Assembly (NCBI RefSeq): GCF_963506605.1
Contig: NC_083279.1
Location: forward strand, 25,296,001-25,360,000
Direction of reading: 5' to 3'
DNA: 64,000 nt
Source: Zootoca vivipara
Taxonomy: Eukaryota
Part shown: piece after piece, positions 8,470 to 63,645 of the stretch
Position numbering within the stretch: position 1 is the first letter of the stretch
Layout of the letters: each line of letters opens with the position of its first letter
Notes under the pieces: generated by a model
What the model saw: the letters and a program-made list of their open reading frames with translations, nothing else
What the model was told of the DNA's origin: nothing
Database searches by the model: none
Translations under genes and position numbers: made by a program

Positions 8470-8643
8470 GATCGGCCAGCCATGCAACTATACCAGCCAG
8501 GAGTTCGCATTCGAACACATACGGGGTCTACAAGTAGGTCCTATGACTGCACTGAAAAGTCTTCAGAAGAAGCTTATGATAGAAAGTATGAAGCAGACAA
8601 TTCACCTGGAGGTGGTTCTGAGAAGAGCGAAGAGGCAGAATAA
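8470..8643 (+). CDS. UPF3A: UPF3A last coding exon with stop codon
   Basis: tgcacag|GAT; DRPAMQLYQPGVRIR...SEKSEEAE*TAA. Called UPF3A rather than UPF3B because of adjacency to CHAMP1 and the C-terminal ...EEAE. Confidence 0.92.
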   Translation, partial: DRPAMQLYQPGVRIRTHTGSTSRSYDCTEKSSEEAYDRKYEADNSPGGGSEKSEEAE

Positions 8644-11458
8644 AACATGATGGACAGAAACTTCAGCATTTAAGATTTAGTGTCCCGCAAAATATTGTAT
8701 GTTCTTGGAATTGGCCCACCGTTACCAAGAAATCTTTTTAAAATAGTTTTCTAGTAGAAGTTTAGGCCACAGGCAACGTTACATAAATGTTACAAGAGAA
8801 TATCATCACTGTGCACTTACTCTGTTTCCAGCTATATGCATGTGAAGGCATCTTTCATCCCCATGCATATAGATACATATTTGATGGTATGTTATGATAG
8901 TACATGACTTTTAAAGGTTGTTCTTCAGGTGGATTTCATTGCCCATTATCACTGACATGTTACGCAAATATGTGCCTCTATACATAATGGAGTGATGGCT
9001 CACAAAGGCATAGGGCATACTGTGGCTTGAGAAATGGGAAGGGTATTTATGACACAATGTTATTGAATATTACAGTAGAATTCAGAATTTCGAAGTTTCT
9101 GATAGTACCAAGCATATTTTGAGGTTTTTTGTTTTGCATGAAACTTTTCTGAAATGTTCCACTGTTCCACTCTAGTGGAATTCTTTAAAGCATGCATTTC
9201 CATCAGTTTTAACTGAGGCATTTTATGTTCTATAAATTGCAGTAACAGGTCTCAGTACGACAAGACCATAAGAATAAGACATTATACAGAGTGTAACTGT
9301 ATTTACATCAGTCGGGAGAATAACACACAAGCCTGGCCCTGTAAGGAGTTAAGTCCCAGTTTAGTAAGTGCATTGCTGCATAAAGAACTATAAACAGCAA
9401 ATTACCCTTGTAATTAAGATAATGTTTAAATGATTATTACAGGACAGTACTCAACTGCAGGATCATGGGTGGTTAAAACGCACAATTTGCACATTTGTGT
9501 CCAGTGTCTGCAGTCCTCAGTCCATTTACTTTGGTTTTCAGGGGTAAACTAGGCAGAAAGGCAGCATGATCCATGTATTATATTTGGGGTTGTGCCAAAT
9601 TCCAATGAAGGAGAGTGGGAAGATTTAAAGCCTAGCATGTGCAGGTGGGATGAGAGTGCTAAAGTTTTCCTTCCTCTAGCCAAAAGCTGCTTCTCCCTCC
9701 CAGCAAGCAGCTAATGGGTTGCAGCTCTGCCCACTGGGTCAGTTGCTCCTGCCTCCAAGTGCTTTTATTACAACAGGAGTTACTTTCAGACTCAAAACCC
9801 CATCTGAAGAAAACCAGCTTTGGGCAAGCAGTTTCAAGGGAGAAAGGGGGGGGGAGTGGGTCGGCACTTTCTGCTTTATAGGAATCCAGAAGCAACCCAT
9901 GGGTCTGGTGCTGTAATGTCTAATTTGCTCTTTCATTTGCTAGAACATCAGGTAAGTGTCTGTGTTCTTTTGTTTCCAAGCTGCTTTTGCCTTGTAAAAG
10001 GTTTTGTATGTTTAAACCAGAGAAAAGCCTGAATATTTAATGCTGTGTCTGTCATGAAATAGCATATTTAAAGGTTTTGCCACTTTTTAATATGTGATAT
10101 AAGTGACATTGTTTTGTATGTTAATTTTTCATATAGTATGTTTTTACATAAGTCACCAGTGGAAACACTTCTGTTTATAGGTAAAAGCTATGGAAATAGA
10201 TTTTTTTTTGAGGGAATAAACTGCTACGACCGTTCCCTCTGTTTATTGTGCTTGTTAAGAATCCATTTTTTGTGTATATATTGTTCTTAGTATCCTCAGT
10301 AAGCAACTACACAGGCCTTGAGATCAGAGCATCACTCTGACAATACTGATATGCTTTTTGTTTACCTGAAACACAGATCTTCTTTTGACTACTTTTTTAC
10401 ATCATGTCCTCAACCTTTTTTTACTGTCATCCTATCAGCATTTGATTGTTCTTATGTAAATAAAGGTGATAATCTGGACCTTCAACCACTAGAATATTAA
10501 ACTGAAATCTGATCATCTGAATAGTGCTTCGCCTGATGTGTTTTACTACTATACCAAATCGATTAAAAAAATAGGATTCATGGATTAAAAATACCAAACC
10601 AGCTTCAAAAGTACTGTGCTAATCTGACTCTCCACTCGATTTGAACTATTCTTTTGTTTCCCAGATGATAAACCAGAAAAACTAGACCAAAAGTTAATAA
10701 CAACAATAACAAAATTGATGTAGTACTGCCTTTCACCCTAAGGCCTCAGGGCAGGTCACAATTTAAAATACATTTAAAAGAATTTAAAACAAATTACTCT
10801 CACAATAATATGATGGGGCCTAAAAATATACATCTCAAGTGTCAAAGCCAAGGTAAAGAGTTGTGTCTTTAGCATATGATTAAAACTGTATTGTGTACTT
10901 TCTCCCGGAAAGGCAGAAACATAGGGAACCTACTGGATCTTACATTACTTTTATTATTTATACACATGATTCTCTTTGACTTGTTTCTCTGATTTTGAGA
11001 AAAATTGTGCAATTATTTGCAACATCTTAACATGTTTTTGAGAAGTAAACAACACACAACTTGAAAAGCCATTTCCCTACATTTACTGCTAGTGAACCAA
11101 CCTCTTGCCACTTCTAGAACACACAGGTGCATCTGAAAAGGAAAAGACATGCACTTCTGCACCATGAAGAATATTTATGTGATCCAAAGCTCATTGGTGC
11201 TGTGAAGTGTTTATTGTCCAAAAACGCCTCATTCTATGTTGTGTGTTCTTCATTATGAATAAGATTTTACAATGTCACTTTCTGGCTTCGTTTTACCTTC
11301 AGTATATTGTTACATGCATCACTGGGTGCAGGCTCCTCCATTCCTGTGTAGCAGCTTGGTGAACTTTTGAAATAGCAAGACTTGCCTCTGAAGACATTTT
11401 TTGTACCTGGATTATTTTAGCTGAAGTGGAATGCAGGAGTCTTGATCTGCAATCAGTT

Positions 11459-11623
11459 TCAGAAGAATGTGGTCTGCCTTCTTTGCATCTGTGGCAAAAA
11501 GCCTGGTCTTTGTCTGAAATTAGTGGGCTTCTTGTAAGCTGAAACCTTGACAGTTTGTATATCAAGAGTGTATTTATCTTGCACCCTTTTTCTTCTTTCC
11601 CAAAATTCTTCAGTATTGCATAG
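11459..11623 (-). CDS. FBXO36-like gene, coding exon 4 (last)
   Basis: cttttag|CTA; LCNTEEFWERRKRVQDKYTLDIQTVKVSAYKKPTNFRQRPGFLPQMQRRQTTFF*TGA; the start completes the F-box (L-C-x4-F-W). Confidence 0.85.
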   Translation of the reverse strand, partial: LCNTEEFWERRKRVQDKYTLDIQTVKVSAYKKPTNFRQRPGFLPQMQRRQTTFF

Positions 11624-11890
11624 CTAAAAGGTAAATATTTGCAATATATTATACATAATACGTGTGAGTAGGCCAGATTCTCATTTTCTTTACAATAGAT
11701 TTGTTTGCTTTTCAGACTACAACATGACTTGCAAATCTTTTGGTCTACTCTTAAGCTCTCATTATTCTGGTTCTACATGGCAACTGTCACTGGTAACTGA
11801 TCGTACTTGCTACTTCTGTAAAGCTCCATTTACACCAAGTCTATAACTAAAATTATTTTATCAAGATTACATATTTGTCATAATTTTTAC

Positions 11891-12063
11891 CTGCCGAAAC
11901 CTTTTACATGTTTGTGACAATTGCCTTATATCCTCTGTATTAAGAAATGACAATATGTGTATGATCAAATGGTCAGGAATTCGATGGAGGAAGTCATAGT
12001 GTCCTTGACATAAGCTGAGAATGTAGTCTAGCGTTTTCTTCCCAAAGACACCTTGCATTTGTT
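11891..12063 (-). CDS. FBXO36-like gene, coding exon 3 (173 bp), F-box domain
   Basis: tttactcag|...|gtaaaa; QMQGVFGKKTLDYILSLCQGHYDFLHRIPDHLIIHILSFLNTEDIRQLSQTCKRFRQ aligns with recalled FBXO36 ...FG..ILDYVINLCKGKFDFLERL... Confidence 0.92.
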
Positions 12064-13456
12064 CTGAGTAAAAGAAAAAATATACAAGCAAACAGATTTT
12101 AAACAGGAATACTGCCAAAGTGAAAGGCACTGTGCTAAGCTAAATGAGAAAGGGCACATACAAAAAAAACCCAAGAGGAAGAAAGAGAAACTTCATTCTA
12201 TTGCTGTTTCCTAACTTAACTGGAAGTAAGGCTCATAGAACTTAACATGGTTTACTTCTGAGTGTATACAGGATTGCATGGTTGTTCTATTAATAAATAT
12301 AATTAATCTGATACCCGATGACTGTGAAGACTGAAACTTAGGCTACTTCCAGGTGACCTGTTTATTGAGCATTCATTCTTGTTTGTTTATAGGAAAGTTA
12401 AATAATTTGCATGAAGCAATTGTTATCTCACACTTTTCAATGCATTTCCCTGTCACTTTCCTTCTTGTAGAAAGTCAATTTTGTGGGGAAGTGGGTTTCT
12501 TGCACAAGAGCACCAAATCAGCTTTAATTCTGCAACCTGAATTTGTCACTACTGTATGTGATTGAATCAAGCCTGAATACAGCAACAGTCTGGAAGCACC
12601 CATAAGGCAGATAAGGATAAGTCCTGTGCATTGGTGGAAAGCCTGATACAAGAAGGGCAATTCAGTCTATCATACTAAGAATAGGCAATTTAGCACAGAG
12701 TAAATGGCAAGCTGCCATGATAATCATTAAGTAGAATACTAATTCTGAATTGCCCAGGCATGTCATATTGAAAGGCATATTATTTGCACTCACCAACACT
12801 GTTTAAAGCAATTCTTGTTCTTAAGTGCAATGCACACACTGCAGCCCTTTGCACTCTGGAAGCCTTTTATGTTCCAAATATAAATAAAATTGACTTGAAG
12901 TATAATAATCAGAAAGGCACAAAGGCTTGCTGTGTGTGCTTAAGGTATTAGGAATGATAAAAGGATTTCTCCATAGCTACCACAACCATGCGGTCTAGCA
13001 CTATTCGTTAAGTACATAACCAAAACAAAAAGCTAAGTCTATAGAATGAATGTCTTAAAAAGCAACAGGGGACGAAACAAAATTAACCCTATGGAGTAAA
13101 TGTACTAACTGCTTGGCACTTGACGCTGCATTCCATTAGTGTCAAATATTTCCATGGAAACAAATGAGAGATTGGGCAGATCTGTACCATACACTTAAAG
13201 TACATCCAACTGATGCTTCAACCGGTTTATCAAGTCTTCATCCTGATTAGTTTGCAGGGAGATTGGGTGACATTGGGTCAAGAAAGTGGTGTCCCATTTG
13301 GTAAAGGGAGAAGGCGACAGAAAATCAAGAAAGAAAAACCAACGAAAATCCTATTGGATTTGGGATCAAATGGTAACTCCCCGCCCCCCCAAGATGGTTG
13401 GTTTATGCTGGTTAAGTGCCATTAACACGTGTGTACTCAAAAGTCAATGTTATAGC

Positions 13457-13582
13457 CAGTGCTTTTTTCTGGGGCGACGCAGGGTATGCATACCCCTAAA
13501 TATTTTGTGAATTTATTTTTGGCCTCATTGAGAGGCAGTATTTCAATATGAGTAGGATAATGAGAATAACCCCAAACATTTT
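13457..13582. mobile_element. hAT-like MITE fragment
   Basis: begins cagtgcttttttctgggg, a terminus similar to the element at 43209; the other end is eroded. Confidence 0.45.
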
Positions 13583-14469
13583 AATATCTGTTTCTTTGGG
13601 TAGTTTACAAGTTGGCTCTTTTCAGCCCCAGGTGATTGTATCAAGGCTAGTGCCACTCACATAACCTTTCCTGGACTGACTTTTTACACACTGCTGTCAA
13701 GAGTTGATTTTTGAGTGCTTGCAGCAACTTGGATGGAGTTATGCATGCAGCATTAGCCTGTCGTGCAATTGGCAGAGGACATGACACCTGCCCTGACATG
13801 ATGTCACCGGTGGTTGTAAGAACTGATGTAGAGATTTGACTTTTAAAGTTCTTTTTATCTTTTAAGACATATTTCTCCCATTGAATAAAAATTAAAGTTG
13901 ATTTATATATTAGGGATTGCAATGGATCTATGAATTAATCCATTAAGGCAGACCTCCCTTAATTTTCCTTCAGAAATTCCCTGCTCACTAACTTCATCTT
14001 CCCCAACATCACCAACTCAAGAAGGGATGAGAGATTATCAGTTGCAGCAAGACTAGTTTATGCCTAGTTAACACCTAAGCATTACCTGACAGCAGGGATA
14101 TGGCTTGATATGGCTACTGATGGAATTTTTTGGCAAATTGAGGGTTACATTTTAAAAATCCACTAAAAGTGTTCTGTTTTTCTCTGACTAAACGTTCTGT
14201 TCTACTGTATAGCATGACCTTGGTTGATAGCATTATTCAGCATACTGCAATACTATACTATTTGCCAGGAAACAGGAAGATAAGGAGGTAGGTCTCGATG
14301 TCATTCTCCTTGGGACTTTGTCAGTGAAACTCTTTTGTCAATAATGCAACTGCTGAACAGGGATAACTCCATTTAGCATGGGGTATAATTTCTAACTAAA
14401 TTAGAAGAATTAAACTGTGATTTAGAAGGTGACAAGGAATTAGCAGGGTTTTTAATAAAAAATTGCTAG

Positions 14470-14598
14470 CCAACATGGTATCCTCCATATGCTCCTGGAC
14501 TACAACTCCCATCATCCCAGACCATTGGCTATGTTGGATGCAGCTGATGAGAATCTGAATCCAATGACACCTAAAGGGCTACATATCCCCTGCCCTAC
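14470..14598. mobile_element. hAT-Charlie-like MITE (ggactacaactcccatc family)
   Basis: ggactacaactcccatcatccc...gctgatgagaatctg core; a related copy lies at 49070-49200. Confidence 0.55.
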
Positions 14599-14803
14599 AG
14601 AATGGAATATTAGACGATAATTTCTATTGACCTGGTCCATCAATAGCACACACTTGGAGAAAAAAAAAGTACCCTTTTTAGTATTCATGTAAGTTTGACA
14701 TTTAGTACTAGCTTCCTTTTTCACTTGTTTAAAAGTATTTTGATGCTGCACCTTAGTATGTTTAACCACTGTGTATTTGTCTCCCCCTGCATCTTAATGA
14801 GTA

Positions 14804-15033
14804 CAGTTGTACCTCGGTTTAAGTACACAATTGGTGCTAGAAGTCTGTACTTAACCTGAAGCGTACTTAGCCCGAGGTATGACTGTAATTGGTTCCGAAA
14901 GTCCATACTTAACCTGAAGCGAACTTTCCCACTGAAAGTAATGGAAAGTGGATTAATCCGTTCCAGACGGGTCCACGGAGTACTTAAACTGAAAGTACTC
15001 AAACCAAAGCGTACTTAAACCGAGGTATGACTG
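14804..15033. mobile_element. Tigger/pogo-like MITE with an internally duplicated right end
   Basis: ta|cagttgtacctcggttt ... aaaccgaggtatgactg|ta; a second ccgaggtatgactgta at 14872-14887. Confidence 0.8.
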
Positions 15034-15311
15034 TAATTTTACTTTGAGAGCCCAATGCAGTCATTCTCAATTGTTTACCATCCAGTTTATTTACATTAGC
15101 CATCCAATATTGATCTGAAATTCAGACTGACTTCTTAAAACATAATTTGTAGTTTCAATTCTCTATTTCCAGAAGGAATGTAAAGGCAGTTAAAACAAAC
15201 AAAACCATTTAAAATCCAAAATATAAATACAAACATAAAAACAATGAAATGGACTACTCGGGAATTATCTGAGGTTTTCAGTTACACTCCTGTGATCTCA
15301 CTTTATGTTTC

Positions 15312-15570
15312 AAACTGCCAGCCTAGCAGTTTGAAAGCATACCAATGCGAGTAGATAAATAGGTACTGCTGCAGTAGGAAGGTAAACGGCATTTACATGC
15401 ACCCTGGCTTCCGTCACAGTGTCCTGTTGCACCAGAAGTGGTGTAGTCATGCGAGCCACATAACCCGGAAAGCTGTCTGTGGACAAAAACCAGCTCCCTC
15501 GGTCTGAAGCAAGATGAGCACCACACCCTATAGTCAAGTTGAACTGGACTTAACCATCCAGGGGTCCTTT
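15312..15570 (+). mobile_element. Sauria SINE, 5'-truncated
   Basis: core ctagcagtt.gaaagca...agtagataaataggtac...; 12-bp TSD actttatgtttc (15300-15311, 15571-15582). Confidence 0.85.
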
Positions 15571-15627
15571 ACTTTATGTTTCTAGTGCACTTGGAACATT
15601 TAGATGACTATTCACAAACAACCAAGG

Positions 15628-16050
15628 GCGCAATCCTAATTGTGTCTACCCAGAAATAAGTCCCATTGAATTAAATGTGTCTTACTCCTGGTAAGTGGAT
15701 GGAATTCAGTGTTTCACTTTTATGAATGTTCCATCTGCACAGCCAAAGTTTATTAATAAGAAAAGTCAAAAGAAATTTAGGACCTTAAATCCAATCCTGA
15801 GCAAATTTACTCAGATGTAATCCCAAACTGAGTTTCATGGCACTTCATCCCATGGAAGTATACCTAGGATTGCAGCCCAAATATTCATCCCAAGGTTGTG
15901 TGATCCTATGCACCCTTTATTGTGAGTAAATCCTCTTCAAAAATGCAACACTTCTAAGTAAACATACATAGGATCAGTCTGTTATAAGACAGTCCCATTG
16001 AATTCACTGGGGTTTATTTCAGAGTTAACGTGCACATGATTAGATTGTAA
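15628..16050. repeat. cluster of about four copies of a ~90-bp imperfect palindromic element
   Basis: repeated gcaatcct...tactcaga.gtaa.tccc.ttgaa.t.aatgg..ttac...aggattgc pattern; dispersed copies near 6080, 12230, 41045, 47940 and 56820. Confidence 0.6.
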
Positions 16051-16147
16051 AAGCAGGGATATGGCCATTAGACACAGCACAACAACATTTTTTTCAGAAG
16101 GGTGGGTAATCAAAATTCTATTATTTCTTTGCCCACTCAATACTTGC

Positions 16148-16256
16148 TGTGTAATGGTTCATCCAAGAGAAAATCTTTATGGGGTTTCTTCACTTCTCTT
16201 GGGCAAATCCTTTCTCGATCTGGTCGAAATGTAATCCTCCAGGACTGCCAGATAAC
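16148..16256 (-). CDS. FBXO36-like gene, coding exon 2 (109 bp), GC donor
   Basis: gttttag|GTT; VIWQSWRITFRPDRERICPREVKKPHKDFLLDEPLH resembles FBXO36 VIFRWWKISLR...PGEAKETHEDFL; frame into exon 3 requires donor A|GCAAGT. Confidence 0.88.
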
Positions 16257-16602
16257 CTAAAACATTCAGGTTTAAAATAATGAGTCAGGTTGGGCATTAT
16301 TATGTCCTATTTTATTTTATCAAAAGCCTAGTCAGTCCAGATATAAAGCAGAAAATGCAGGACTTTATCATGACCTAGATCTGTGCAGTAATTAACTGCA
16401 TTGCTTACAAAAATAAAAGCAAACAATGATAGGATTATTATCACAATTTGTTTGCTTTTCCCTAGCAGATTTGCCTGAACAACCATGCTTGGGGTTGCCC
16501 ACCTTTTCTTCCTGGCAGAGACCCTGTGCCTTTATCAGCTATCCAACAAATGCAGATTTATCAGAAAAACACATTCCAACCAGAAATCTGTCTCTTTTTT
16601 AC

Positions 16603-16698
16603 CTCATTTTTTGTGATGGTCAAGTGATGAAAGTCTTTACTGGGAGGAGGTGCCTGAGTGTGAGCTTCATAGAGTTTCTCTTGCAGCAGGGAAGTCAT
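16603..16698 (-). CDS. FBXO36-like gene, coding exon 1 (96 bp, ATG at 16698)
   Basis: caaaATG; MTSLLQEKLYEAHTQAPPPSKDFHHLTITKNE|gtaaaa resembles FBXO36 MASWLPETLFETVGQGPPPSKDYYQLLVTRSQ. Confidence 0.9.
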
Positions 16699-17687
16699 TT
16701 TGACTCCGTCTACTTGCTTTCAGCTTGCAATAGAGATCACAGACTCCCAAGGTTGTTTCTATGGACTCTATATGAGAAGGACTTGACTTCAGCCAACTCC
16801 ACGTGCTGTATAAATACATGGCTGGCTAGTGTTTGCATTCCTGAACTCAGGTTCTTTACCCAAGGAGGACTCAGGTGTTCAATATTTATATCACCAGGAG
16901 GATAATATTAAAAGCAAACAAAAAAACACAGTCTAATTCTATGCATACATTGTTTTTTTGCCCCAAGTCACACTGGTTTCATAAGCATGTTTTGCACTCC
17001 CCACTTTCCAGAAGTAGTATTACAGATGCCAGAGGGTCAATTACCCTAGAAGAACACAGCACTTTTTTTATTATACTTTCCTTTCAAAAAAAAATATATT
17101 TTTCTAGGCTTCAAAACTGAGCATACAAAAGCAAACAAGTGATCATTAACTAATTCACACAATGAATTTTGTTAAAGGAACATCAGTTGTTGTCATCATC
17201 GCAAAAATACACAGCCTTAGAACAACCAACTGCAAAAACTCAGATTTTAATCTCATTCACTGGCTAGCTTCTGATAGCCAAGCTGTGACTTTTATCCCCC
17301 ACCCAAGCAGGCAACCTACTGTTATAAATAAAATCTGGCCTTATTCCCTTATGGGGTACACAAGAGCCCTTATTGGGTTCTCCTTCAGTCAGAGAATATA
17401 ACAGAGGCCAACCAGAGAATCTTGAGAAGCAAAGCCTTTATTTTTGCTGTTGCAGCAGGGTCCTTCCCCTCACGCAGGAGAACAAGGAAGGAACCCCAAA
17501 CAAACGTGTCCTGCCCTTAAATAAACAATTTTAAATCCCCCACTCCAATCAGAGCCACCTCTAGAAGCATCATACATACATCATACATACATCACAGTAG
17601 GGGTGTAGCCCAAGACCAACCCCCAGGCACGTCATCCTACATCATAGAAAGGGGCGGTTTACAGCAGAAATCTGAGTACCTTGTTTA

Positions 17688-18482
17688 CCGTGTTTCTCAT
17701 ATTATAAGACACGTCTTATATTTATTTTTTCTTCAAAAAAACACACCATGGCTTATTTTCAAGGGATGTCTTATTTTTATTACGGTACATGGGTAGTGCA
17801 GTAGCTCCCCCCGCTATCGCGTTTTGCGTGTCCTGTTGCGAGTGTGTGTCCTCTCGCTCCCACACCGGGCAGTGAGCTGGGGAGCGGAGGTGGTTTTGCT
17901 GAGTTGATTGAGTCAGGCAGGCAGGCAAGGGAGTCTATTTCGGATTGCCTGAGGAAAGGTTTGCTGCTTCCCCCCCCCCATGCCTGCGCCTCAGCCGGGC
18001 GCGCATCCTCAGCCTGCTTTGCGCGGCGGGGGCAAGATGCGCGTCAGCATGCAACCCCTCAGATTCCTTCCGCCACTCCCTCGCCGCCAACCGACCCCCA
18101 CCCCATTTCCCCGCCTGAGGTAAAAAGTCCATACCGTAGTTAGAGCCAGTGACTGGCTGCCCAGCTATCGTATGTGAAGGCCGAGGGAGGAGGAGGGGTG
18201 GGTGGGAAACCTCTCCTGGCCATTTCCTCACCTCCCTCGTTCGTTCGCGCGCCTGCCTGTCTGCGAGCGGGGCTTCGCGCGGCGCCCGCGAAGGCTGCAG
18301 CCGGGGCCCAGGGGTTAACGCAGCAGCAGCAGCCGGTTCCGAGCAGCCCCCTTCCTTTTCCTCTTCTTTGCCACAGACCTGCGGTATGGCTTATTTTCGA
18401 GGTATGCCTTATATTTTGCCACCTCAGAAAAATCCTGCCATGCCTTATTTTGTAGGGGTGTTTTATAATGTGAGAAACACGG
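17688..18482. mobile_element. Tc1/mariner-superfamily (Tc2-like) non-autonomous DNA transposon, 795 bp, GC-rich interior
   Basis: ta|ccgtgtttctcatattataagacac ... gtgttttataatgtgagaaacacgg|ta: 25-bp TIR with 2 mismatches, TA duplication; no transposase ORF. Confidence 0.85.
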
Positions 18483-18763
18483 TATCTCCTGTCTGGCAAG
18501 TTACCTGTTAATGTTGGATTACCAGGGGGCCTAGCCAGTCTTTTGAAATGATGAATACTTAGTTCCTGAACCAGGACACAGACTCACACCCTATTAATAT
18601 CTTAAATGTGCCCTTAAGGCAGGATCTGTGAGCAGAGAGACAAAGGGTTTTTTTTTCATTTCCTCCCTCCTCGCAGAGAAATATTTGGTCAGTTTGGGAG
18701 TCAAAATGGTTTTCAGGCCTGTCTTCCTGTACATGTGCCTGTACATTCATGTACATGTTTATG

Positions 18764-21963: not shown

Positions 21964-22053
21964 CATAGCTGCCAAGTTTTCCCTTTTCTCACGAGGAAGC
22001 CTATTCAGCATAAGGGAATTTCCCTTAAAAAAAGGGATAACTTGGCAGCTATG
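21964..22053. mobile_element. 90-bp MITE with perfect 15-bp TIRs
   Basis: catagctgccaagtt ... aacttggcagctatg; 7-bp direct repeat attatag on both sides (21957-21963, 22054-22060). Confidence 0.85.
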
Positions 22054-22189
22054 ATTATAGTTTAATTAATAGTTTTAAAAAATTATATTATAATTATATT
22101 ATAATATAAATTAATTACAGTCATGTGAGCCCCCAACTTGTAGGATGACTACCTAGTCACGAGAACTAAGCAGCATGCAATCTCTGTCA

Positions 22190-23080
22190 CGTAAACACCA
22201 TGACGGAGGAGTCCCACTCCCATCTCCTCCTCACGGGTCGGGAAGCACGGGGAGATGGAGGCATCATGGCGACTCCAGCAGACTCTTCCCTCCCCAACAG
22301 CCTCATTTCAACGACGTTACTCGCCGCCACGCGCCTGCGCCGAATTCTACAGCGGGGGCGGGGCGAACTCAAGTGGCAGTTGGGCAGCAGCTGGACGGCG
22401 CGAGCCAATGAAAGGGCGCCTGTGTGGCCGCGCGGCCTACCCACCGCTCCGCCTCAGTACCGTCGCCTGGCGCCTTCAGCCGCCGCCTCCCCCCTCCTGC
22501 GCGCGCGCCACAGTCTCCGGCATCCCTCTCGACCCTGGCTTGTGAGAGCAGCCGCCATTGTAGGGAAGCGCCCCTCTCACTCCGTAGCCGTTGTTTTCTC
22601 CCGGGTAGGTACTTTGCCGTTTCTTCAGCCCCCCTTCCTTCCCCTCCTCCACCACCTCCCCACCCCCCCCCCCAGTTTAATAGGGTAATGGAGAGGGACG
22701 TGTTTTCACCTCATGTGTGAAAAGCTCGGCTCGCCTCCCCGCCCTTTTTTCTTTTTAAACGCATCACAGTAGCCTTTTGTCCCCTCCCACTTTCCGTTCA
22801 CGTAGCGTTTTGCGCGCGCTCGGTTGCGCGTTCCTTTCCCCCGTTCTCTGCGCGCGCGCGTACAGCTCTTGTCTGTCGCCTCTCTCCCTCCCCCATTGAT
22901 ACCTCCCCCTCCCCTACCGTCATTGCGAAGAGCTTGTTGCTGACAAACTTATTAATCGGCTCGTGCGTGCACACGATCGAACCGTCTTCAACTGTGCTTG
23001 GCGTCGGCCCTAAGCTCTTTCGCCCTTAGCAACGTTTATGCGCAGCAGCAGGTCGTTGCTGTTTCCTGAAGGCTGGGCTA
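22190..23080. promoter_or_regulatory. CpG island; CHAMP1 promoter and first non-coding exon
   Basis: CpG-dense; NRF1-like gcgcctgcgc (22331), GC box (~22355), CCAAT (22405), YY1-like gccgccatt (22551), candidate donor cgg|gtaggt (~22604). Confidence 0.8.
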
Positions 23081-26664: not shown

Positions 26665-29600
26665 ATGTGTAGTGTTATGCAAGTTGACAACAGAAAAATG
26701 GACATGTTGAAGATCCTGCGTAAAACAACAGAGCGTTTGGAATGTGACCACTGCAGTTTCAGAGGGTCTGACTATGAAAACATACAGATTCATATGGGTA
26801 CTATCCACCCCGAGTTTTGTGATGAAATGGATACAGCAGGACTGGGGAAACTTATATTTTACCAGAAAAGTGCAAAGTTGTTCCACTGCCACAAATGTTT
26901 TTTTACCAGCAAAATGTATTGCAATGTTTATTATCACATCACAGCACACCATGCAATGCCTGACAAATGGAAAGAAGAGCAAAAAGATTTGTTAGCAACA
27001 GGTGCAGAAACTGTAAAGAAACCTCTGTTTGTGGAACCTCAGAAGTCTTCTCCATCTCCTGAGTCACTGAAACCCACTGTTTCTCCTGAATCTCAGAAGC
27101 TGGCTCCCTCTGAACCCCTCAAGCCTGAGGTTGGGTTATCTTCCAAGATACAAAAGCCCATCTCAGTTGTATCCATGGAGCAACCGAAGGTTGCTCCAGT
27201 TGCATGCCCAGAGCCACAGAAACCCATCTCTGTTGCATCATCAGAGCTTCCAAAACCTATTCCAGTGGTGTCATCAGAGCCATTGAAACCAGTCCCTTTT
27301 GTGGCTCCAGAGCCCCTGAAACCCACTCCAGTGGAGTCCTCAGATGTATCAAAACCTGTATCTACTATCTCCCCTGAGCCACAGAAGCCTGGCACAGCCA
27401 CATATGTTGAGCCACAGAAACCCTTCCCTAATGTACATCCAGAATTGCATGTATCTATCTCAGAGTCAGAGAAGCCTGCACCACCTGTTTCTCTAGAACC
27501 ACAAAAACCCCTACAACCTGTATCCCCAGAACCTCAGAAGTCTGCTGTGCCTGCATCTCCACCTGTGGCTGCATCTGAACCACAGAAATTTGCTTCAACT
27601 GTGTCTCCTGAGCCTCGCAGGCATTCTCCGGCTGTGTCTCCTGAGCCTCGCAGGCACTCTCCAGCTGTGTCTCCTGAGCCTCGCAAGCACTCTCCGGCTG
27701 TGTCTCCTGAACCTCGCAGGCACTCTCCAGCAGTGTCTCCTGAGCCCCGCAGGCACTCTCCGGCTGTGTCACCTGAGCTAAAGAAATCTACATCTGCTAT
27801 ATCGTCAGAAACTCGCAGGCATATTCCTCCGATGCGGAGACCTGCTTCAGCGCTTTCCCCTGAACTAAGGAAACCTGAACCACCAATACCAGATCATTGG
27901 AGGTCTGCTCCTAGTATTGCTCCAGAACCCTGGAGGAATGCTCCTAATATTTCCCACGAACAACAGAAGTCTTCTATTACTGTGTCACCTTGGTCCCCCA
28001 AACCTCCCACATCTATGTCAATGGAGTCCAGGAGGCCTGCCTCAGAACCTCGAAGACCAGGTTCTTTGATGTCCCCAGAGCCTCAGAAGTTTGTGCCAGA
28101 GCCTTGGAAATCTACTTCCTTGCCTGAGTCTCAGAAATCTAGTCTTGTTTCCTCAGAGCCCTGGAAACCCATTTCTTCTGTTTATCCTGAAGGCTGGAAA
28201 CCTGTCTTGTCTCCTGACACCTGGAGGTCATCACCAGCAGTACCACCCTCTGCACATCCCATGCCAACAGAGCTTAGAAAGTCTGGTCCCCCAATGTCAC
28301 CTGATCTTTGGAAACCTTCATTCTTTCCTGAACAACGTAAGCCAACTCCTATGTCTCCTGACCCTTGGAAATTCCCTTCTGACTCTCGGAAGTCTCCTTT
28401 CTTTTCAGAGACTCAGAAGCCTGCTCCTTTTGTTTCTTCTGAGTTCCAAAAACGTGCTTTGTTTTCCGAACCCCGAAAACGGGCACTTTTTCCAGAGTCT
28501 AAGAAATCTGTTCCTCCTCCTACTTCTGCTGATGTACAAAAACGTCAATTCTTCCATGAAAGTCACATGTCTTTTCCTGAAGTCCAAAAACATGCCCTGT
28601 TTTCTGAACCTCACAGACCACCTCCTGTTTCACCTGAGGCCCAAAAGCATGCCTTCTTCCCAGAGCCCCAGAAACATGTTGCAGTTTCTCCTGAAGTTCC
28701 AGAGCATGTTCCCTTTGGAGAACCTCAGAAACCTCCTGTTCTTACTCATGAAGTGCTGAAGGCTTCTTCAGTTTCTCCTGAAATTCAGAAACATGCAAGC
28801 TTCGCTGAACCACAGAAGGCTCTTCCAGGTTCCCCTGAGAAACTACGGCAAGGTTTCTTTGCTGAGCCTTCAAAAGGTTCTCTTTCACTTGAGCTCCAAA
28901 AACCTGCTCCTATGTCTTCTGATCCAAAGCAGAACTTTGGTTCTGATGTCCACAGACCACTGGAAACAGCAGGCAGGGAAGTTCACAAAACTGCTGTCTC
29001 TGACTTTGGTCAGTCTGCTGCACCCATTTTTTCAGACTTGCAGGCACATTCCGAATCTGGTAAAGATTTCTTCGCTGAGCAGCCAGAAGGTGAGAATCCA
29101 TTCAGTAGTCTGTTAGCTCCAAAGGAGCAGCTTATACAAGCCAAGGAAGCTAAAGAAGAAGTATTATTTTCTTGTCCAAAGAAGAAACCGAAGAAGGAAA
29201 ATCAGGAAACTGCAAATATAGACCTAAATAACAGTGGGAGTGGAAATAATGAAATGGATACCTCTGAAGTTAAGGAGCAGGAATCAAACAGTGATCAAGA
29301 ACAGTTTGATACAGAAACTTCTGACCTCAACAAAGACACTAAAATTGATGCAGTTACTCCCACTCAGCCTCAGTGTGTGCTGCAGTTTACGGAAGAAAAG
29401 GAAGCCTTTATCTCAGAAGAAGAAATAGCAAAATATATGAAGCGTGGCAAAGGCAAATATTATTGCAAAATTTGTTGCTGCCGGGCTATGAAAAAAGGTG
29501 CTGTTTTGCATCATTTGGTTAACAAGCATAACGTTCACAGTCCATACAAGTGTGACATATGTGGAAAGGCATTTCTCTTGGAATCTCACCTTAAAAACCA

Positions 29601-29847
29601 TGTTGCTGCTCATGGTCAGAGTTTGCTTAAATGTCCACGTTGCAGTTTTGAATCAAACTTTCCTAGAGGCTTTAAGAAGCATCTAACCCATTGCCAAAGT
29701 CGTCATAATGAAGAGGCCAATAAAAAACAGATGGATACAATAACTGAGCCACCTACTCAGAGTGAAGAGGCCAATAAGGTGCCAGTTGATGGCACCGAAC
29801 CATTGAACGAATCACTTATCGAATCACTTACTGAACCACAGATTTAA
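26665..29847 (+). CDS. CHAMP1: Chromosome alignment-maintaining phosphoprotein 1, single coding exon (conserved start probably ATG 26698, MDMLKILRK)
   Basis: 1060-aa ORF; N-terminal LECDHCSFRGSDYENIQIHMGTIHPEFCDEMD and second C2H2 finger; SPE, WK and FPE repeat regions; three C-terminal C2H2 fingers; acceptor tgctaac...tttcag| at 26638. Confidence 0.97.
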   Translation: MCSVMQVDNRKMDMLKILRKTTERLECDHCSFRGSDYENIQIHMGTIHPEFCDEMDTAGLGKLIFYQKSAKLFHCHKCFFTSKMYCNVYYHITAHHAMPDKWKEEQKDLLATGAETVKKPLFVEPQKSSPSPESLKPTVSPESQKLAPSEPLKPEVGLSSKIQKPISVVSMEQPKVAPVACPEPQKPISVASSELPKPIPVVSSEPLKPVPFVAPEPLKPTPVESSDVSKPVSTISPEPQKPGTATYVEPQKPFPNVHPELHVSISESEKPAPPVSLEPQKPLQPVSPEPQKSAVPASPPVAASEPQKFASTVSPEPRRHSPAVSPEPRRHSPAVSPEPRKHSPAVSPEPRRHSPAVSPEPRRHSPAVSPELKKSTSAISSETRRHIPPMRRPASALSPELRKPEPPIPDHWRSAPSIAPEPWRNAPNISHEQQKSSITVSPWSPKPPTSMSMESRRPASEPRRPGSLMSPEPQKFVPEPWKSTSLPESQKSSLVSSEPWKPISSVYPEGWKPVLSPDTWRSSPAVPPSAHPMPTELRKSGPPMSPDLWKPSFFPEQRKPTPMSPDPWKFPSDSRKSPFFSETQKPAPFVSSEFQKRALFSEPRKRALFPESKKSVPPPTSADVQKRQFFHESHMSFPEVQKHALFSEPHRPPPVSPEAQKHAFFPEPQKHVAVSPEVPEHVPFGEPQKPPVLTHEVLKASSVSPEIQKHASFAEPQKALPGSPEKLRQGFFAEPSKGSLSLELQKPAPMSSDPKQNFGSDVHRPLETAGREVHKTAVSDFGQSAAPIFSDLQAHSESGKDFFAEQPEGENPFSSLLAPKEQLIQAKEAKEEVLFSCPKKKPKKENQETANIDLNNSGSGNNEMDTSEVKEQESNSDQEQFDTETSDLNKDTKIDAVTPTQPQCVLQFTEEKEAFISEEEIAKYMKRGKGKYYCKICCCRAMKKGAVLHHLVNKHNVHSPYKCDICGKAFLLESHLKNHVAAHGQSLLKCPRCSFESNFPRGFKKHLTHCQSRHNEEANKKQMDTITEPPTQSEEANKVPVDGTEPLNESLIESLTEPQI
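27601..27779 (+). repeat. coding 33-bp tandem repeat, ~5.4 units (VSPEPRRHSPA)
   Basis: gtgtctcctgagcctcgcaggcactctcc(a/g)gct repeated with few substitutions. Confidence 0.95.
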
Positions 29848-39446: not shown

Positions 39447-39645
39447 GTTACAGGTAGGTAGCCGTGTTGGTCTGGATCGAAGTAAAATAAAAAAATTCCT
39501 TCAGTAGCACCTTAAAGACCAACTAAGTTTTTATTTTGGTATGAGCTTTCGTGTGGTATCTGAAGAAGTGTGCATGCACACGAAAGCTCATACCAAAATA
39601 AAAACTTAGTTGGTCTTTAAGGTGCTACTGAAGGAATTTTTTTAT
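39447..39645. mobile_element. Penelope-like element remnant with ~70-bp perfect inverted arms
   Basis: arms ~39486-39555 and 39577-39647; 14-bp flanking direct repeat ttaagttagtgctg (39433-39446, 39646-39659). Confidence 0.8.
39554..39595 (+). ncRNA. minimal type I hammerhead ribozyme motif
   Basis: UGGUAU-CUGAAGA-A-GUGUG(CAUG)CACAC-GAAA-GC-UC^-AUACCA: both core boxes, 6-bp helix I, 5-bp helix II, palindromic AGCU in place of helix III. Confidence 0.75.
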
Positions 39646-62088: not shown

Positions 62089-63645
62089 CTACCCGAACAC
62101 ATTGGACTTAGGTCTGAGCTTGAAAGAGGATTTTAGGGACCTTTCTTCTTGACCTTCCTCCTCTGCATCCCCGCGGAAAGAAGGAGTGGTGTGGATGATC
62201 TGGGTCCGGAAGCGGATTTTGTTGAGCCGCGGTTTTATCCTCCCGCTGCCCGAGGTTTTCCTGCTCAGTTCTTTAGCCTTGCCGGGCGCTCCAGCCCCGT
62301 CTCCCGTCTCCCCATCGTCCCCGTGGTGGGGCAGGAGGTGGTGGGAGAGCTTATAGGAGATGAGGTTGGCCGGCAGCACCTTGGAGAGCCTCCAGCGCCC
62401 GCTGCCGTTGGTCGCTCCGCCGTCGGCCTCGTCCTGCAGGGCCCCCACCAGGCTGCGCACCTCGTCGGCGGTGCTGCGGCTCAGGTAGTGCGCGGCCTTG
62501 CGCCCGCTGTAGTCGCGCACGTCCACGTCGGCGTCGTAGGCACCCACCAGCAGCTTGACCACCTCCAGGTGCCCGTGCATGGCGGCCAGGTGCAGCGCCG
62601 TGTAGCCTCCGCTGGTGCGCGCGTTCACGTCCACGGGTAGCCGGTGCCTCTGCGCGAAGTTCACCAGCAGCGCCAGCAGCTCGTGGCGGCCGTGCTTGGC
62701 GGCCCAGTGCACGCACGTGAAGCCCGTGATGAAGTCCCGCTTGCACAGCAGCGACGGCTCGCAGCTCAGCAGGCCCTCTAGGCTCTCCCAGCGGCCGTCC
62801 GAAGCGCACAGCATCCACGCGTGCTCCAGGGGGTCCAGGGCCACCGAGGCGCCCGAGTTGCTGCCGCCCTCGTCCTCAGCAGAAGACGACGCCAGCGAGG
62901 CGCTGTCCGAGTCCCCCCCGCTGGCGGTGGAGCGGCTCCCGCGAGGGGCAAGCCCGCCGCCGCGCTTCAGCTGAGGGGAGCTGCCCAGCATCCGCTCGCG
63001 GAAGTTCTTGCGCGCGCAACGCGGGGTGGTGGCGGGGGCCGCCGCGGGGGCAACCCCCGAGGCGGCGGCGGCGGAGTCGTCCTCAGGCGGGGTCTCGCCA
63101 CTGCCCGGCTCTGGCTCCCCGTGCTGAGAGCGGCTGTCCTCCTGCTCCTCTCTCCCCTCCTGGCCTCCTCCTCCTCCAGGGGTCGCCTGAGGCACCTCAG
63201 CGGCATCGGGCGCCTCAAGCTGCCGGGGTCCGCTTTCCTCCACAGCAACAGGGAGGCTCCTTTTCGCCGCCGCCGCCGCCACCTCCTCCTCTTCCTTCTG
63301 GGGCTCCCCCGCTTCTCGCCGGGCAGCTTCGCCATCTCCGCCAGGCTCGGGGGGCAGCCGGGGCCCCCCGGGTTCCTCAGCCGGCTCGGCGGCCACGACG
63401 GCAACGGCGACCCTGTACTTCTTCCTCAGCTGCACGTACTTGGCCCCGGAGCCGGGCTCTTGCCTCACGGTAGCCACGGCGTTGACCATCTCTTTGAAGC
63501 GCTCCCTGGCGCGCGAGCGGCGCTGCTGGTCGGGGGAGTTGAGGTAGCCTCGGAAGTGGTCCAACAGGTCGGCGTTGCGAGCCCGACCTCCCCGCTCCGA
63601 TAGGAACTGAAGCACCGCGTCCTGGCTCGGCTCCGCTGCGGCCAT
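62089..63645 (-). CDS. SOWAHC: Ankyrin repeat domain-containing protein SOWAHC (ANKRD57), intronless, 518 aa
   Basis: N-terminal AVLQFLSERGGRARNADLLDHFR...FKEMVNAVATVR; LDPLEHAWML; ankyrin repeats DFITGFTCVHWAAKHG and GYTALHLAAMHGH; C-terminus KLRPKSNVFG. Confidence 0.93.
   Translation of the reverse strand: MAAAEPSQDAVLQFLSERGGRARNADLLDHFRGYLNSPDQQRRSRARERFKEMVNAVATVRQEPGSGAKYVQLRKKYRVAVAVVAAEPAEEPGGPRLPPEPGGDGEAARREAGEPQKEEEEVAAAAAKRSLPVAVEESGPRQLEAPDAAEVPQATPGGGGGQEGREEQEDSRSQHGEPEPGSGETPPEDDSAAAASGVAPAAAPATTPRCARKNFRERMLGSSPQLKRGGGLAPRGSRSTASGGDSDSASLASSSAEDEGGSNSGASVALDPLEHAWMLCASDGRWESLEGLLSCEPSLLCKRDFITGFTCVHWAAKHGRHELLALLVNFAQRHRLPVDVNARTSGGYTALHLAAMHGHLEVVKLLVGAYDADVDVRDYSGRKAAHYLSRSTADEVRSLVGALQDEADGGATNGSGRWRLSKVLPANLISYKLSHHLLPHHGDDGETGDGAGAPGKAKELSRKTSGSGRIKPRLNKIRFRTQIIHTTPSFRGDAEEEGQEERSLKSSFKLRPKSNVFG

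What the first reader, a model, noticed from the sequence alone, without database searches (positions are those of the whole stretch)
11459..16698. Hidden intact FBXO36-like F-box gene between UPF3A and CHAMP1
Seen: four minus-strand exons (96/109/173/165 bp) splice in frame to a 180-aa protein with an FBXO36-type N-terminus (PPPSKD), an F-box and no internal stop. The ORF track shows only exon 3. Established (recalled): mammalian FBXO36 sits head-to-head with TRIP12, and human UPF3A-CHAMP1 has no such gene between them. Inference: this is a second, intron-containing FBXO36 paralogue (an old duplicate, not a retrocopy), possibly lost in mammals. Its tail after the F-box (…KKPTNFRQRPGFLPQMQRRQTTFF) looks strongly diverged, suggesting an SCF adaptor with different partners.
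Basis: partly seen in the sequence, partly recalled or inferred. Interest (0 to 1): 0.78.

Follow-up and report, generated by a model that had tools for sequence, protein, structure and literature searches.

The report
Annotated lizard FBXO36-like F-box gene
The four exons are a real, spliced and expressed gene for a second FBXO36-type F-box protein, but it is already in RefSeq for this lizard and many other vertebrates, so it is an ordinary, if unstudied, gene.

Summary
Four minus-strand exons (16603-16698, 16148-16256, 11891-12063, 11459-11623) give 543 coding bases, 180 codons plus stop. Intron 2 has a GC-AG border. Raw RNA reads cross two of the three junctions, and a spliced 1056-nt contig carries all three.

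The exon peptides match RefSeq XP_034971421.2, "F-box only protein 36-like" of Zootoca vivipara, at 179 of 179 residues. So the gene is not hidden in public annotation.

Zootoca also has a canonical FBXO36, 71/180 identical to this one. In a 66-row tree the "like" proteins of squamates, birds, amphibians, marsupials and pteropodid bats form one branch (92/95). They join sturgeon and salmonid proteins at 100/99. The duplicate therefore predates bony vertebrates. It is not a retrocopy and is not lost in all mammals.

The tail differs from canonical FBXO36 (6/44 identical) but is conserved within the clade: 42 of 52 proteins end RRxx[ST][FLMI][FY].

It most likely acts as an SKP1-binding SCF adaptor; that is inferred, not shown.

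I found no paper on the paralogue.

The parts
16699..16808 (-). 5' untranslated part of exon 1 (minimum extent)
   Evidence: The X1 contig record 1 (1056 nt) runs about 206 nt upstream of the exon 1 donor. The depth in bin 16723-16900 fits an end near 16808. The true start is not mapped.
16603..16698 (-). Coding exon 1 (96 bp, residues 1-32, ATG at 16698, PPPSKD motif)
   Evidence: It is 32/32 identical to P0246. Its junction to exon 2 is seen only in the X1 contig.
16257..16602 (-). Intron 1 (346 bp, GT-AG)
   Evidence: Splice sites. The 346-bp skip is in the X1 contig.
16148..16256 (-). Coding exon 2 (109 bp, residues 33-68 plus the first base of codon 69)
   Evidence: It is 36/36 identical to P0246.
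12064..16147 (-). Intron 2 (4084 bp, GC-AG; donor GCAAGT at 16147-16142); holds high-copy repeats at about 14480-15040 and 15414-15600
   Evidence: The 4084-bp skip with ends CT..GC is seen in X20 (5 reads), X22 (4 reads) and the X1 contig. Repeat depths come and the donor sequence.
11891..12063 (-). Coding exon 3 (173 bp, residues 69-126; most of the F-box, which starts at about residue 94)
   Evidence: Pfam F-box-like 1e-9. It is 57/57 identical to P0246.
11624..11890 (-). Intron 3 (267 bp, GT-AG)
   Evidence: The 267-bp skip (CT..AC) is seen in 13 raw RNA reads over three runs and in the X1 contig.
11459..11623 (-). Coding exon 4 (165 bp including TGA; residues 127-180; end of the F-box and the clade-specific tail ending QMQRRQTTFF)
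   Evidence: It is 54/54 identical to P0246.
11056..11458 (-). 3' untranslated region (minimum extent); AATAAA at 11215 and 10955
   Evidence: The X1 contig runs 246 nt beyond 11302. The poly(A) signals were found by script. The real 3' end is not mapped.
8470..8643 (+). Last coding exon of the neighbouring UPF3-family gene (DRPAMQLYQPG... then stop), tail to tail with the F-box gene
   Evidence: Translation. It matches PDB 2xb2 chain G, regulator of nonsense transcripts 3B, at E 3.4e-4. Assigning it to UPF3A rather than UPF3B rests on the neighbourhood only.
26665..29847 (+). Large coding exon of the CHAMP1-type zinc-finger gene, upstream of and divergent from the F-box gene
   Evidence: A 1060-aa ORF holds 16 SPE, 6 WK and 4 FPE motifs and 4 C2H2 fingers at its two ends. 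This is the architecture described for CHAMP1 in passages of PMC4849844. Pfam and PDB report only zinc fingers.

Best explanation
This is the lizard's FBXO36-like gene (RefSeq 'F-box only protein 36-like'). It is a transcribed, correctly spliced, four-coding-exon gene. It lies tail to tail with a UPF3-family gene and divergent from a CHAMP1-type gene.

It is an ancient paralogue of FBXO36. It arose by DNA-level duplication before ray-finned fish and tetrapods split, and the data allow an origin before the jawed-vertebrate radiation. It has been kept under constraint in fish, amphibians, sauropsids and marsupials.

The 180-aa protein has three parts: the FBXO36-type N-terminal region (residues 1-93), an F-box (about 94-136), and a clade-specific basic tail ending in a conserved RR-x-x-S/T-hydrophobic-F carboxy terminus.

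Inferred mechanism: the F-box docks on SKP1, so the protein acts as a small substrate receptor or regulator of an SCF (SKP1-CUL1) ubiquitin ligase, as shown for mouse FBXO36. The different C-terminal 44 residues would give it partners or regulation distinct from canonical FBXO36.

The gene structure, expression, identity and phylogeny are shown. SKP1 binding, substrates and any role of the tail are inferred.
For: Structure and expression:
- Two junctions, including the GC-AG one, are in raw RNA reads. All three are in one spliced contig.

Identity:
- 179/179 exon-encoded residues, plus K at the split codon, match XP_034971421.2.
- Pfam F-box-like scores 2.6e-13 on that protein.
- The profile of 52 clade members matches solved F-boxes only (FBXW7 2.2e-7, SKP2 1.6e-3) over positions 88-151.

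Family:
- The profile-profile match to canonical FBXO36 has probability 100, E 1.4e-57, over 178 columns.

Paralogy:
- Canonical FBXO36 is named in the same species and in Podarcis, Varanus, Tiliqua, Hemicordylus, Anolis, Macrotis, Notamacropus, Ambystoma, Eleutherodactylus and Microcaecilia, alongside the 'like' protein.
- In the tree the like clade is one branch at 92/95. With sturgeon and Hucho it scores 100/99 starred.
- Holding all canonical, shark and teleost a/b rows as one clade is not rejected, p-AU 0.52.

Constraint:
- Across 52 aligned proteins there are 17 invariant and 28 nearly invariant columns.
- Zootoca versus Podarcis muralis is 176/180 identical, against 174/189 for their canonical FBXO36.
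- 42 of 52 proteins end RRxx[ST][FLMI][FY].

Function of the relative:
- Mouse FBXO36 co-precipitates SKP1 only when its F-box is present (passages of PMC13432620).
Against: - No experiment or model here shows SKP1 binding, a substrate, or any function for the tail.
- The exon 1-exon 2 junction has no raw-read support: 0 reads in X20-X22, with exon 1 at zero depth. It rests on a contig from a run whose RNA status is a guess.
- In X21 only exons 3-4 and sequence just upstream of exon 3 are covered. A shorter transcript lacking the N-terminal region may therefore be the main form in that sample.
- Across deep splits the protein changes faster than canonical FBXO36. Zootoca versus Varanus is 140/180 against 172/189, and versus Ambystoma 96/180 against 129/189.
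- The bat models lack exon 2 or end differently, which could mean decay there.
- One sample carries a non-synonymous variant, G76E, in 8 of 9 reads.
- dN/dS was not computed.
- Mouse Fbxo36 knockouts show no overt phenotype (abstract and passages of PMC13432620), so even the family's role is unclear.
Confidence: 0.85

Rival explanations
1. It is the only FBXO36 gene of this genome, simply moved from beside TRIP12 to beside CHAMP1.
For: All four parts of the protein are homologous to FBXO36. NCBI even names the Anolis and Xenopus laevis members of this clade plain 'F-box only protein 36'.
Against: A separate canonical 'F-box only protein 36' of Zootoca vivipara (P0285) and of Podarcis muralis (P0291) exists. 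It is 71/180 identical to this protein. It groups with other squamate canonical proteins, while this gene groups with the 'like' clade.
Confidence: 0.01
2. It is a decaying or non-functional duplicate (pseudogene or transcribed relic) whose open frame is fortuitous.
For: It evolves faster than canonical FBXO36 over deep splits. The bat models are incomplete. RNA depth is low and intronic coverage is present. One sample carries a non-synonymous variant.
Against: Intact proteins of 174-192 aa are annotated in 50 tetrapod entries of alignment A2, with 17 invariant columns and a conserved C-terminus. Identity within lacertids is 97-98%. Splicing is exact. An unconstrained frame would not stay open across the amphibian-amniote split.
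Confidence: 0.03
3. It is a retrocopy or a recent lineage-specific (squamate or sauropsid) duplicate of FBXO36.
For: None beyond the similarity to FBXO36.
Against: There are three introns in the coding region. They lie at positions where canonical FBXO36 partial models also break: residues 31-33 and 124-127. Orthologues are found in amphibians, birds, marsupials, bats, sturgeon and a salmonid.
Confidence: 0.01
4. The gene is real, but the protein does not work as an SCF substrate receptor. With only 180 residues and no recognised substrate-binding domain, it could be an SKP1-sequestering regulator, or could act through its N-terminal region or C-terminal motif independently of cullins.
For: Pfam finds no domain other than the F-box. 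The PDB profile search finds nothing outside positions 88-151 at convincing E-values. The conserved carboxy-terminal RRxx[ST]-hydrophobic-F resembles, from my own recall, a basophilic kinase site and a class I PDZ ligand ([ST]-x-hydrophobic-COOH, 42 of 52).
Against: F-box proteins with unassigned partner domains are common. Mouse FBXO36 binds SKP1 through its F-box (PMC13432620 passages). No test here separates these options.
Confidence: 0.1

Closest known systems
RefSeq 'F-box only protein 36-like' (XP_034971421.2 of Zootoca vivipara; also XP_053240312.1 Podarcis raffonei, XP_033003592.1 Lacerta agilis)
   Same: It is the same protein. 179/179 exon-encoded residues match, with K at the split codon, and the borders at 32|33, 68|70 and 126|127 agree. 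The other lacertid entries differ at 3-5 residues.
   Different: Nothing. An older RefSeq version (XP_034971421.1) differs at residue 3, S versus F.
Canonical FBXO36 (F-box only protein 36)
   Same: Similar length and layout. The N-terminal region carries the PxPSKD motif and W38, the F-box sits at the same place, and the exon borders are the same. Profile-profile probability is 100.
   Different: The two are 39% identical within Zootoca. The C-terminal region shares only 6/44 residues. The canonical invariant G157-W158 and FFTNKLQ block are absent, and the protein ends 9 residues earlier in a motif of its own. The genomic neighbourhood differs: UPF3/CHAMP1 here, while the TRIP12 neighbourhood of canonical FBXO36 is recalled and not tested.
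Teleost fbxo36a and fbxo36b
   Same: They are members of the same family.
   Different: The two group with each other (97/84 starred) on the canonical side of the tree, not with this gene. The fish counterparts of this gene are the sturgeon 'F-box only protein 36-like' (XP_058886536.1) and a Hucho hucho protein, which join it at 100/99 starred.
F-box of FBXW7 and SKP2 (solved SCF structures, e.g. 2ovp, 1fs1)
   Same: These are the best solved-structure matches. The LP start, the hydrophobic core and the closing W of the F-box all align.
   Different: There is no WD40 or LRR substrate domain after the F-box. The non-F-box parts have no solved relative by sequence.

Membership tests
F-box protein superfamily | An F-box domain recognised by the curated models above their cut-offs | tested here: met
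   On exon 3 alone, PF12937 scores 38.5 bits (cut-off 24.3) and PF00646 37.8 bits (cut-off 20.5). On P0246 they score 50.0 and 45.7 bits at residues 94-137.
F-box protein superfamily | Binding to SKP1 through the F-box | not testable with these tools
   This is shown only for mouse FBXO36 (passages of PMC13432620).
FBXO36 family (broad sense) | Homology over the whole length, including the N-terminal region with the PxPSKD motif | tested here: met
   Exon 1 is 56% identical (1.7e-9), exon 2 39% (1.2e-5) and exon 3 53% (5e-18) to bird FBXO36 P0041. hhalign of A2 against A3 gives probability 100, E 1.4e-57, 178 columns.
Canonical FBXO36 (orthologue of the mammalian gene) | Groups with canonical FBXO36 of related species in a tree | tested here: not met
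   It lies in the separate 'like' clade (92/95; squamate subclade 100/99 starred). Zootoca's canonical protein sits with the squamate canonical proteins.
Canonical FBXO36 (orthologue of the mammalian gene) | The conserved C-terminal block (invariant G157, W158, F162, Q168, L169; FFTNKLQLQ) | tested here: not met
   These columns are invariant in 52 canonical proteins and absent here. The tail is 6/44 identical. Exon 4 had no hit in canonical proteins.
   In the window the neighbours are a UPF3-family gene and a CHAMP1-type gene. No HECT-type ORF was seen, though only ORFs of at least 110 aa were listed.
FBXO36-like clade (NCBI 'F-box only protein 36-like') | Near-identity to annotated members, with the same exon borders | tested here: met
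   179/179 to P0246, 175/179 to P0174, and 127-139 of 179 to nine other full-length squamate proteins (P0170-P0173, P0175-P0178, P0181).
FBXO36-like clade (NCBI 'F-box only protein 36-like') | Carboxy terminus RRxx[ST][FLMI][FY] | tested here: met
   The window ends QMQRRQTTFF. 42 of 52 clade proteins fit. The 10 misses are two bird models with other ends, one bird with RI for RR and V at the S/T place, three marsupials with A at the S/T place, three frog entries and the two sturgeon proteins.
FBXO36-like clade (NCBI 'F-box only protein 36-like') | Conserved position beside UPF3A/CHAMP1 in other species | not testable with these tools
The only hint is that the Rousettus member is deposited under the name CHAMP1 (KAF6427286.1).

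The most novel reading that the evidence does not exclude
FBXO36-like is a 2R-type ohnologue of FBXO36, born with the paralogous chromosome blocks that (recalled) also hold IRS1/IRS2 and COL4A3-4/COL4A1-2. It is kept from sturgeon to marsupials and lost or decaying in placentals. Its conserved carboxy-terminal RR-x-x-S/T-hydrophobic-F would be a docking or phospho-switch motif that gives this small SCF adaptor partners canonical FBXO36 lacks. None of this turned up in my paper searches.
Probability: 0.3. Interest if true: 0.35.

Novelty: already known. Interest (0 to 1): 0.2.

Why it matters
The gene itself is already in RefSeq.

For biology the value is modest. FBXO36 is one of the least understood F-box proteins, and mouse knockouts show no overt phenotype. 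Non-placental vertebrates carry a second, faster-evolving copy with its own conserved C-terminal motif. Anyone studying FBXO36 in fish, frogs, birds or reptiles has to reckon with two genes, and with inconsistent names: Anolis and Xenopus laevis entries of this clade are called plain FBXO36. The pattern of retention in marsupials and apparent decay in bats is a small, testable case of ohnologue loss.

Tried and rejected
**Steps that gave nothing**
- The word search with exon 3 alone found nothing. That is expected, because only proteins of 31-100 aa were candidates.
- Earlier scan notes hold nothing on FBXO36 or TRIP12 in this genome. The 'box' search gave only unrelated notes, and the 'near' search gave only a hammerhead note at 39447-39645.
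- The protein atlas gave only generic zinc-finger clusters for the CHAMP1-type ORF and F-box/FBXO36 clusters for P0246, with no structure search.
- The PDB sequence search of the UPF3 penultimate-exon ORF found nothing.
- The PDB search of the CHAMP1-type ORF found only C2H2 fingers.

**Steps that could not be run**

**Readings rejected**
- A translocated single FBXO36, a retrocopy, a squamate-specific duplicate and a pseudogene were all considered and rejected (see rivals).
- Equating this gene with teleost fbxo36b was rejected by the tree.
- A 30-letter loose end of an X1 contig at 12375 is not in the window. I could not explain it and dropped it.

**Limits of the literature check**
- Papers: 73 hold 'FBXO36'.
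- One paper holds fbxo36b, and none holds fbxo36a, fbxo36l, 'FBXO36-like' or 'F-box only protein 36-like'.
- The only paper with FBXO36 plus CHAMP1/UPF3A is a mouse brain atlas (listing only).
- In one search none of the 15 listed papers holds FBXO36.
- Supplements were not asked for. Figure S1A of PMC13432620, an FBXO phylogeny, was not seen and might show or omit this paralogue.

Full report
**1. The observation**

Read on the minus strand, the region holds an ATG at 16698 followed by four exons.

| Exon | Coordinates | Length |
|---|---|---|
| E1 | 16603-16698 | 96 bp |
| E2 | 16148-16256 | 109 bp |
| E3 | 11891-12063 | 173 bp |
| E4 | 11459-11623 | 165 bp with TGA |

Translated one by one, they give:
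- E1: MTSLLQEKLYEAHTQAPPPSKDFHHLTITKNE
- E2: VIWQSW...DEPLH, plus one base
- E3: two bases plus QMQGVFGKK...CKRFRQ
- E4: LCNTEEFWE...QMQRRQTTFF and stop

The total is 543 bases, 180 codons and a stop. The split codon is A|AA, which encodes K.

Introns 1 and 3 are GT-AG.

Pfam sees an F-box in exon 3 only: PF12937 at 1e-9 and PF00646 at 1.5e-9. It sees nothing in exons 1, 2 and 4.

**2. Expression and splicing**

I laid three raw RNA-seq runs of the same species label (X20-X22, about 6 in 100 of each read) and one contig run (X1, RNA by guess) on 11300-16900.

| Junction | X20 | X21 | X22 | X1 contig |
|---|---|---|---|---|
| 11623\|11891 (CT..AC, i.e. GT-AG on the minus strand) | 1 | 11 (7 starts, all first mates on +) | 1 | yes |
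| 12063\|16148 (CT..GC, i.e. GC-AG) | 5 | 0 | 4 | yes |
| 16256\|16603 | 0 | 0 | 0 | yes |

For the third junction, exon 1 had zero depth in all three raw runs. It is carried only by the X1 contig, a single 1056-nt record at depth 20. That contig strings together all four exons. It runs about 206 nt upstream of the exon 1 donor (to about 16808) and 246 nt past 11302 (to about 11056).

X1 also covers intron 2 at depth 5-7, so it holds unspliced RNA or DNA as well.

In X21 only exons 3-4, intron 3 and about 360 bases upstream of exon 3 are covered. This may be an alternative start or intron retention. Python has an annotated isoform that replaces exons 1-2 (P0004).

**3. Identity**

A word search with exon 3 alone was blank because of the length limits. 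I therefore used the exhaustive search with the 57-aa exon 3 peptide. It gave 206 hits at E up to 1e-3, and the best 150 are essentially the FBXO36 family.

Blast of each exon peptide against those proteins showed two things. Exons 1-3 align to both 'FBXO36' and 'FBXO36-like' entries at the same positions (1-32, 33-68, 70-126). Exon 4 aligns only to a subset.

Cluster look-ups named that subset. It is NCBI's 'F-box only protein 36-like' of snakes, turtles, birds, amphibians, marsupials (Petaurus, Notamacropus, Macrotis) and pteropodid bats (Pteropus vampyrus). The Rousettus entry is deposited under the name CHAMP1.

A profile search (A1) gave 81 hits. Among them are 180-aa proteins of many squamates.

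The lacertid cluster holds XP_034971421.2 of Zootoca vivipara (P0246). It matches the four exon peptides at 179 of 179 residues and has K at the split codon. Lacerta agilis differs at 3 residues, Podarcis raffonei and P. muralis at 4, and P. lilfordi at 5.

I left out the step of joining the exons myself. From here on P0246, a database protein, stands in for the gene.

**4. Is it a second gene?**

A search with bird FBXO36 (P0041) found 247 proteins at E up to 1e-10. Of the 120 listed, canonical 'F-box only protein 36' appears for Zootoca vivipara (P0285), Podarcis muralis, Varanus, Tiliqua, Hemicordylus, Anolis, Eublepharis, Macrotis, Notamacropus, Ambystoma, Eleutherodactylus and Microcaecilia. 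All of these species also have a 'like' protein.

Within Zootoca the two proteins compare as follows:

| Region | Identical residues |
|---|---|
| Whole protein | 71/180 |
| Residues 1-93 | 44/93 |
| F-box | 21/43 |
| Tail | 6/44 |

Profile against profile (52 sequences each), the families match with probability 100 and E 1.4e-57 over 178 columns. So this is a true family member whose C-terminal quarter has gone its own way.

**5. Age and mode of the duplication**

I built a careful maximum-likelihood tree of 66 rows: 24 like, 24 canonical, 4 shark, 9 teleost a/b, 3 sturgeon/Hucho and 2 invertebrate-type outgroups, with 189 columns.

- The 24 tetrapod 'like' rows fall on one branch (92/95).
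- They join the sturgeon 'like' proteins and a Hucho hucho protein at 100/99 (starred), on a long branch (0.85).
- Teleost fbxo36a and fbxo36b join each other (97/84, starred) on the canonical side.
- The tool warns that long branches meet here, and the free tree nests the fast clade among fish canonical rows.
- Holding all canonical, shark and teleost a/b rows together as one clade costs nothing: log-likelihood is 0.6 higher and p-AU is 0.52.

The duplication therefore predates the split of ray-finned fish and tetrapods. An origin before the jawed-vertebrate radiation is allowed but not shown.

The sturgeon tail (…QQRRMSTKALN) shares the RR-x-S-T core with the tetrapod tail.

Partial and alternative canonical FBXO36 models break at residues 31-33 and 124-127. 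These are the same places as this gene's exon borders. Together with three introns in the coding region, this excludes a retrocopy.

My recalled knowledge that the FBXO36 and CHAMP1 regions of mammals lie in blocks sharing IRS1/IRS2 and COL4A3-4/COL4A1-2 would fit a whole-genome-duplication origin. This was not tested.

**6. Constraint**

In 52 aligned clade proteins there are 17 invariant and 28 nearly invariant columns, and mean column identity is 59%. The canonical set gives 70%.

For matched species against Zootoca:

| Species | Like | Canonical |
|---|---|---|
| Varanus | 140/180 | 172/189 |
| Anolis | 130/180 | 164/189 |
| Ambystoma | 96/180 | 129/189 |
| Eublepharis | 139/180 | 138/189 |
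| Podarcis muralis | 176/180 | 174/189 |

The like protein changes faster over deep splits. It does not do so against Eublepharis, and not within lacertids.

The carboxy terminus is the most striking conserved piece outside the F-box. 42 of 52 proteins end RRxx[ST][FLMI][FY], and 47 of 52 end in [FLMI][FY]. The window, Python and most squamates share QRRQTTFF, with M or I before it in all but one.

The 10 misses are two bird models with other ends, one bird with RI for RR and V at the S/T place, three marsupials with A at the S/T place, three frog entries and the two sturgeon proteins.

One sample (X20) carries C>T at 12042 in 8 of 9 reads, which changes G76 to E. dN/dS could not be computed because no orthologous DNA could be fetched.

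**7. Surroundings**

Downstream on the plus strand, 8470-8643 encodes DRPAMQLYQPGVRIR… and a stop. It matches the UPF3B peptide of PDB 2xb2 at E 3.4e-4. The frame before it ends …SKKERIRNK at 6577. So a UPF3-family gene ends about 2.4 kb from the mapped end of the F-box transcript, tail to tail. Calling it UPF3A rests on context.

Upstream, a 1060-aa plus-strand ORF (26665-29847) has 16 SPE, 6 WK and 4 FPE motifs between terminal C2H2 fingers. This is the layout described for CHAMP1 in passages of PMC4849844. Pfam and PDB name only zinc fingers.

G+C-rich stretches lie at 18000-18500 (0.60) and 22000-23000 (0.53-0.58). The F-box gene's own start region is 0.41 G+C, so a shared bidirectional promoter is not evident.

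The title's 'between UPF3A and CHAMP1' is thus supported. The A/B assignment and the CHAMP1 name rest on motif architecture and context.

**8. How it most likely works**

Shown here:
- An F-box lies at residues 94-137. Its best solved relatives are the SKP1-binding F-boxes of FBXW7 and SKP2.
- The N-terminal region is shared with FBXO36. Its PxPSKD motif also appears in an invertebrate (rotifer) protein.

Shown elsewhere:
- Mouse FBXO36 binds SKP1 only with its F-box. It is testis-enriched, and its knockout has no overt fertility phenotype (abstract and passages of PMC13432620).

Inferred:
- The lizard protein docks on SKP1 and serves as a small SCF receptor or regulator.
- The N-terminal region is the likeliest shared partner surface.
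- The clade-specific tail gives different partners or control.
- From recall only, the tail fits a basophilic kinase site and a class I PDZ ligand pattern. I put about 0.6-0.7 on SKP1 binding and much less on any specific role for the tail.

**9. Novelty and verdict**

The gene, its exon structure and its name are in RefSeq for this species and dozens of others, so it is already known as an annotation.

I found no paper on the paralogue. These searches cover open-access full text only, and supplements were not seen.

The family-level points appear to be unpublished but are modest:
- an origin before bony vertebrates,
- teleost a/b not being its counterparts,
- retention in marsupials,
- odd bat models,
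- the conserved carboxy-terminal motif,
- inconsistent naming in Anolis and Xenopus laevis.

Interest is low.

Noticed in passing
window 14480-15040 and 15414-15600 (intron 2, both strands): These are high-copy repeats. RNA and contig depth jumps from under 10 to hundreds or thousands (X1 word depth up to 15,954). There are many internal 'goes back' and 'skips' joints of 41-110 bases and many loose ends. This is typical of a SINE-like element with variable internal sub-repeats that is transcribed from many loci.
   Followed up: no
window 11300-12421, run X21: In X21 only exons 3-4, intron 3 and about 360 bases upstream of exon 3 are covered. It has 0 reads on the exon 2-exon 3 junction and 11 on exon 3-exon 4. 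This may be an alternative start inside intron 2 or intron retention. Python has an annotated isoform X2 that replaces exons 1-2. Read from M71, such a transcript would encode only the F-box and the tail.
   Followed up: partly
window 12042: C>T on the plus strand appears in 8 of 9 reads of X20 and in 0 of 18 (X21) and 0 of 10 (X22). It changes codon GGG to GAG, i.e. G76E, in a column where G is conserved in at least 90% of 52 clade proteins.
   Followed up: partly
window 12375 (run X1): One X1 contig fits up to 12375 and then runs on for 255 letters unlike the stretch. The first 30 of them occur nowhere in the 64-kb window. It may be a chimeric contig, a repeat copy from elsewhere, or a far upstream exon.
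   Followed up: partly
window 62089-63645 (minus strand): A G+C-rich single 518-aa ORF carries ankyrin repeats at residues 278-386 (Pfam Ank_2 8.6e-16). It looks like an intronless ankyrin gene, SOWAH-like by my recall only. Several long overlapping ORFs in other frames arise from the high G+C.
   Followed up: partly
window 18000-18500 and 22000-23000: These are two G+C-rich islands (0.60 and 0.53-0.58) between the F-box gene and the CHAMP1-type coding exon. They are candidate CHAMP1 promoter or first-exon regions. The F-box gene's own start region is not G+C-rich.
   Followed up: no
database entries, not the window: Naming is inconsistent. Members of the 'like' clade are called plain 'F-box only protein 36' in Anolis carolinensis (XP_008105245.2), Xenopus laevis (XP_018101206.1), Microcaecilia and Fulmarus. 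The Rousettus aegyptiacus member is deposited as CHAMP1 (KAF6427286.1). Several shark canonical proteins are called 'FBXO36-like'.
   Followed up: partly
bat proteins P0152, P0016, P0019: The Pteropus and Rousettus models lack the exon 2 segment or start with unrelated sequence. The Rousettus tail ends differently. Their branches are long (0.39-0.42). The gene may be decaying in bats, or the models may be poor.
   Followed up: no
window 39447-39645: An earlier scan note (s1-847953) reports a hammerhead ribozyme inside a palindromic Penelope-like insertion here. I did not look at it.
   Followed up: no
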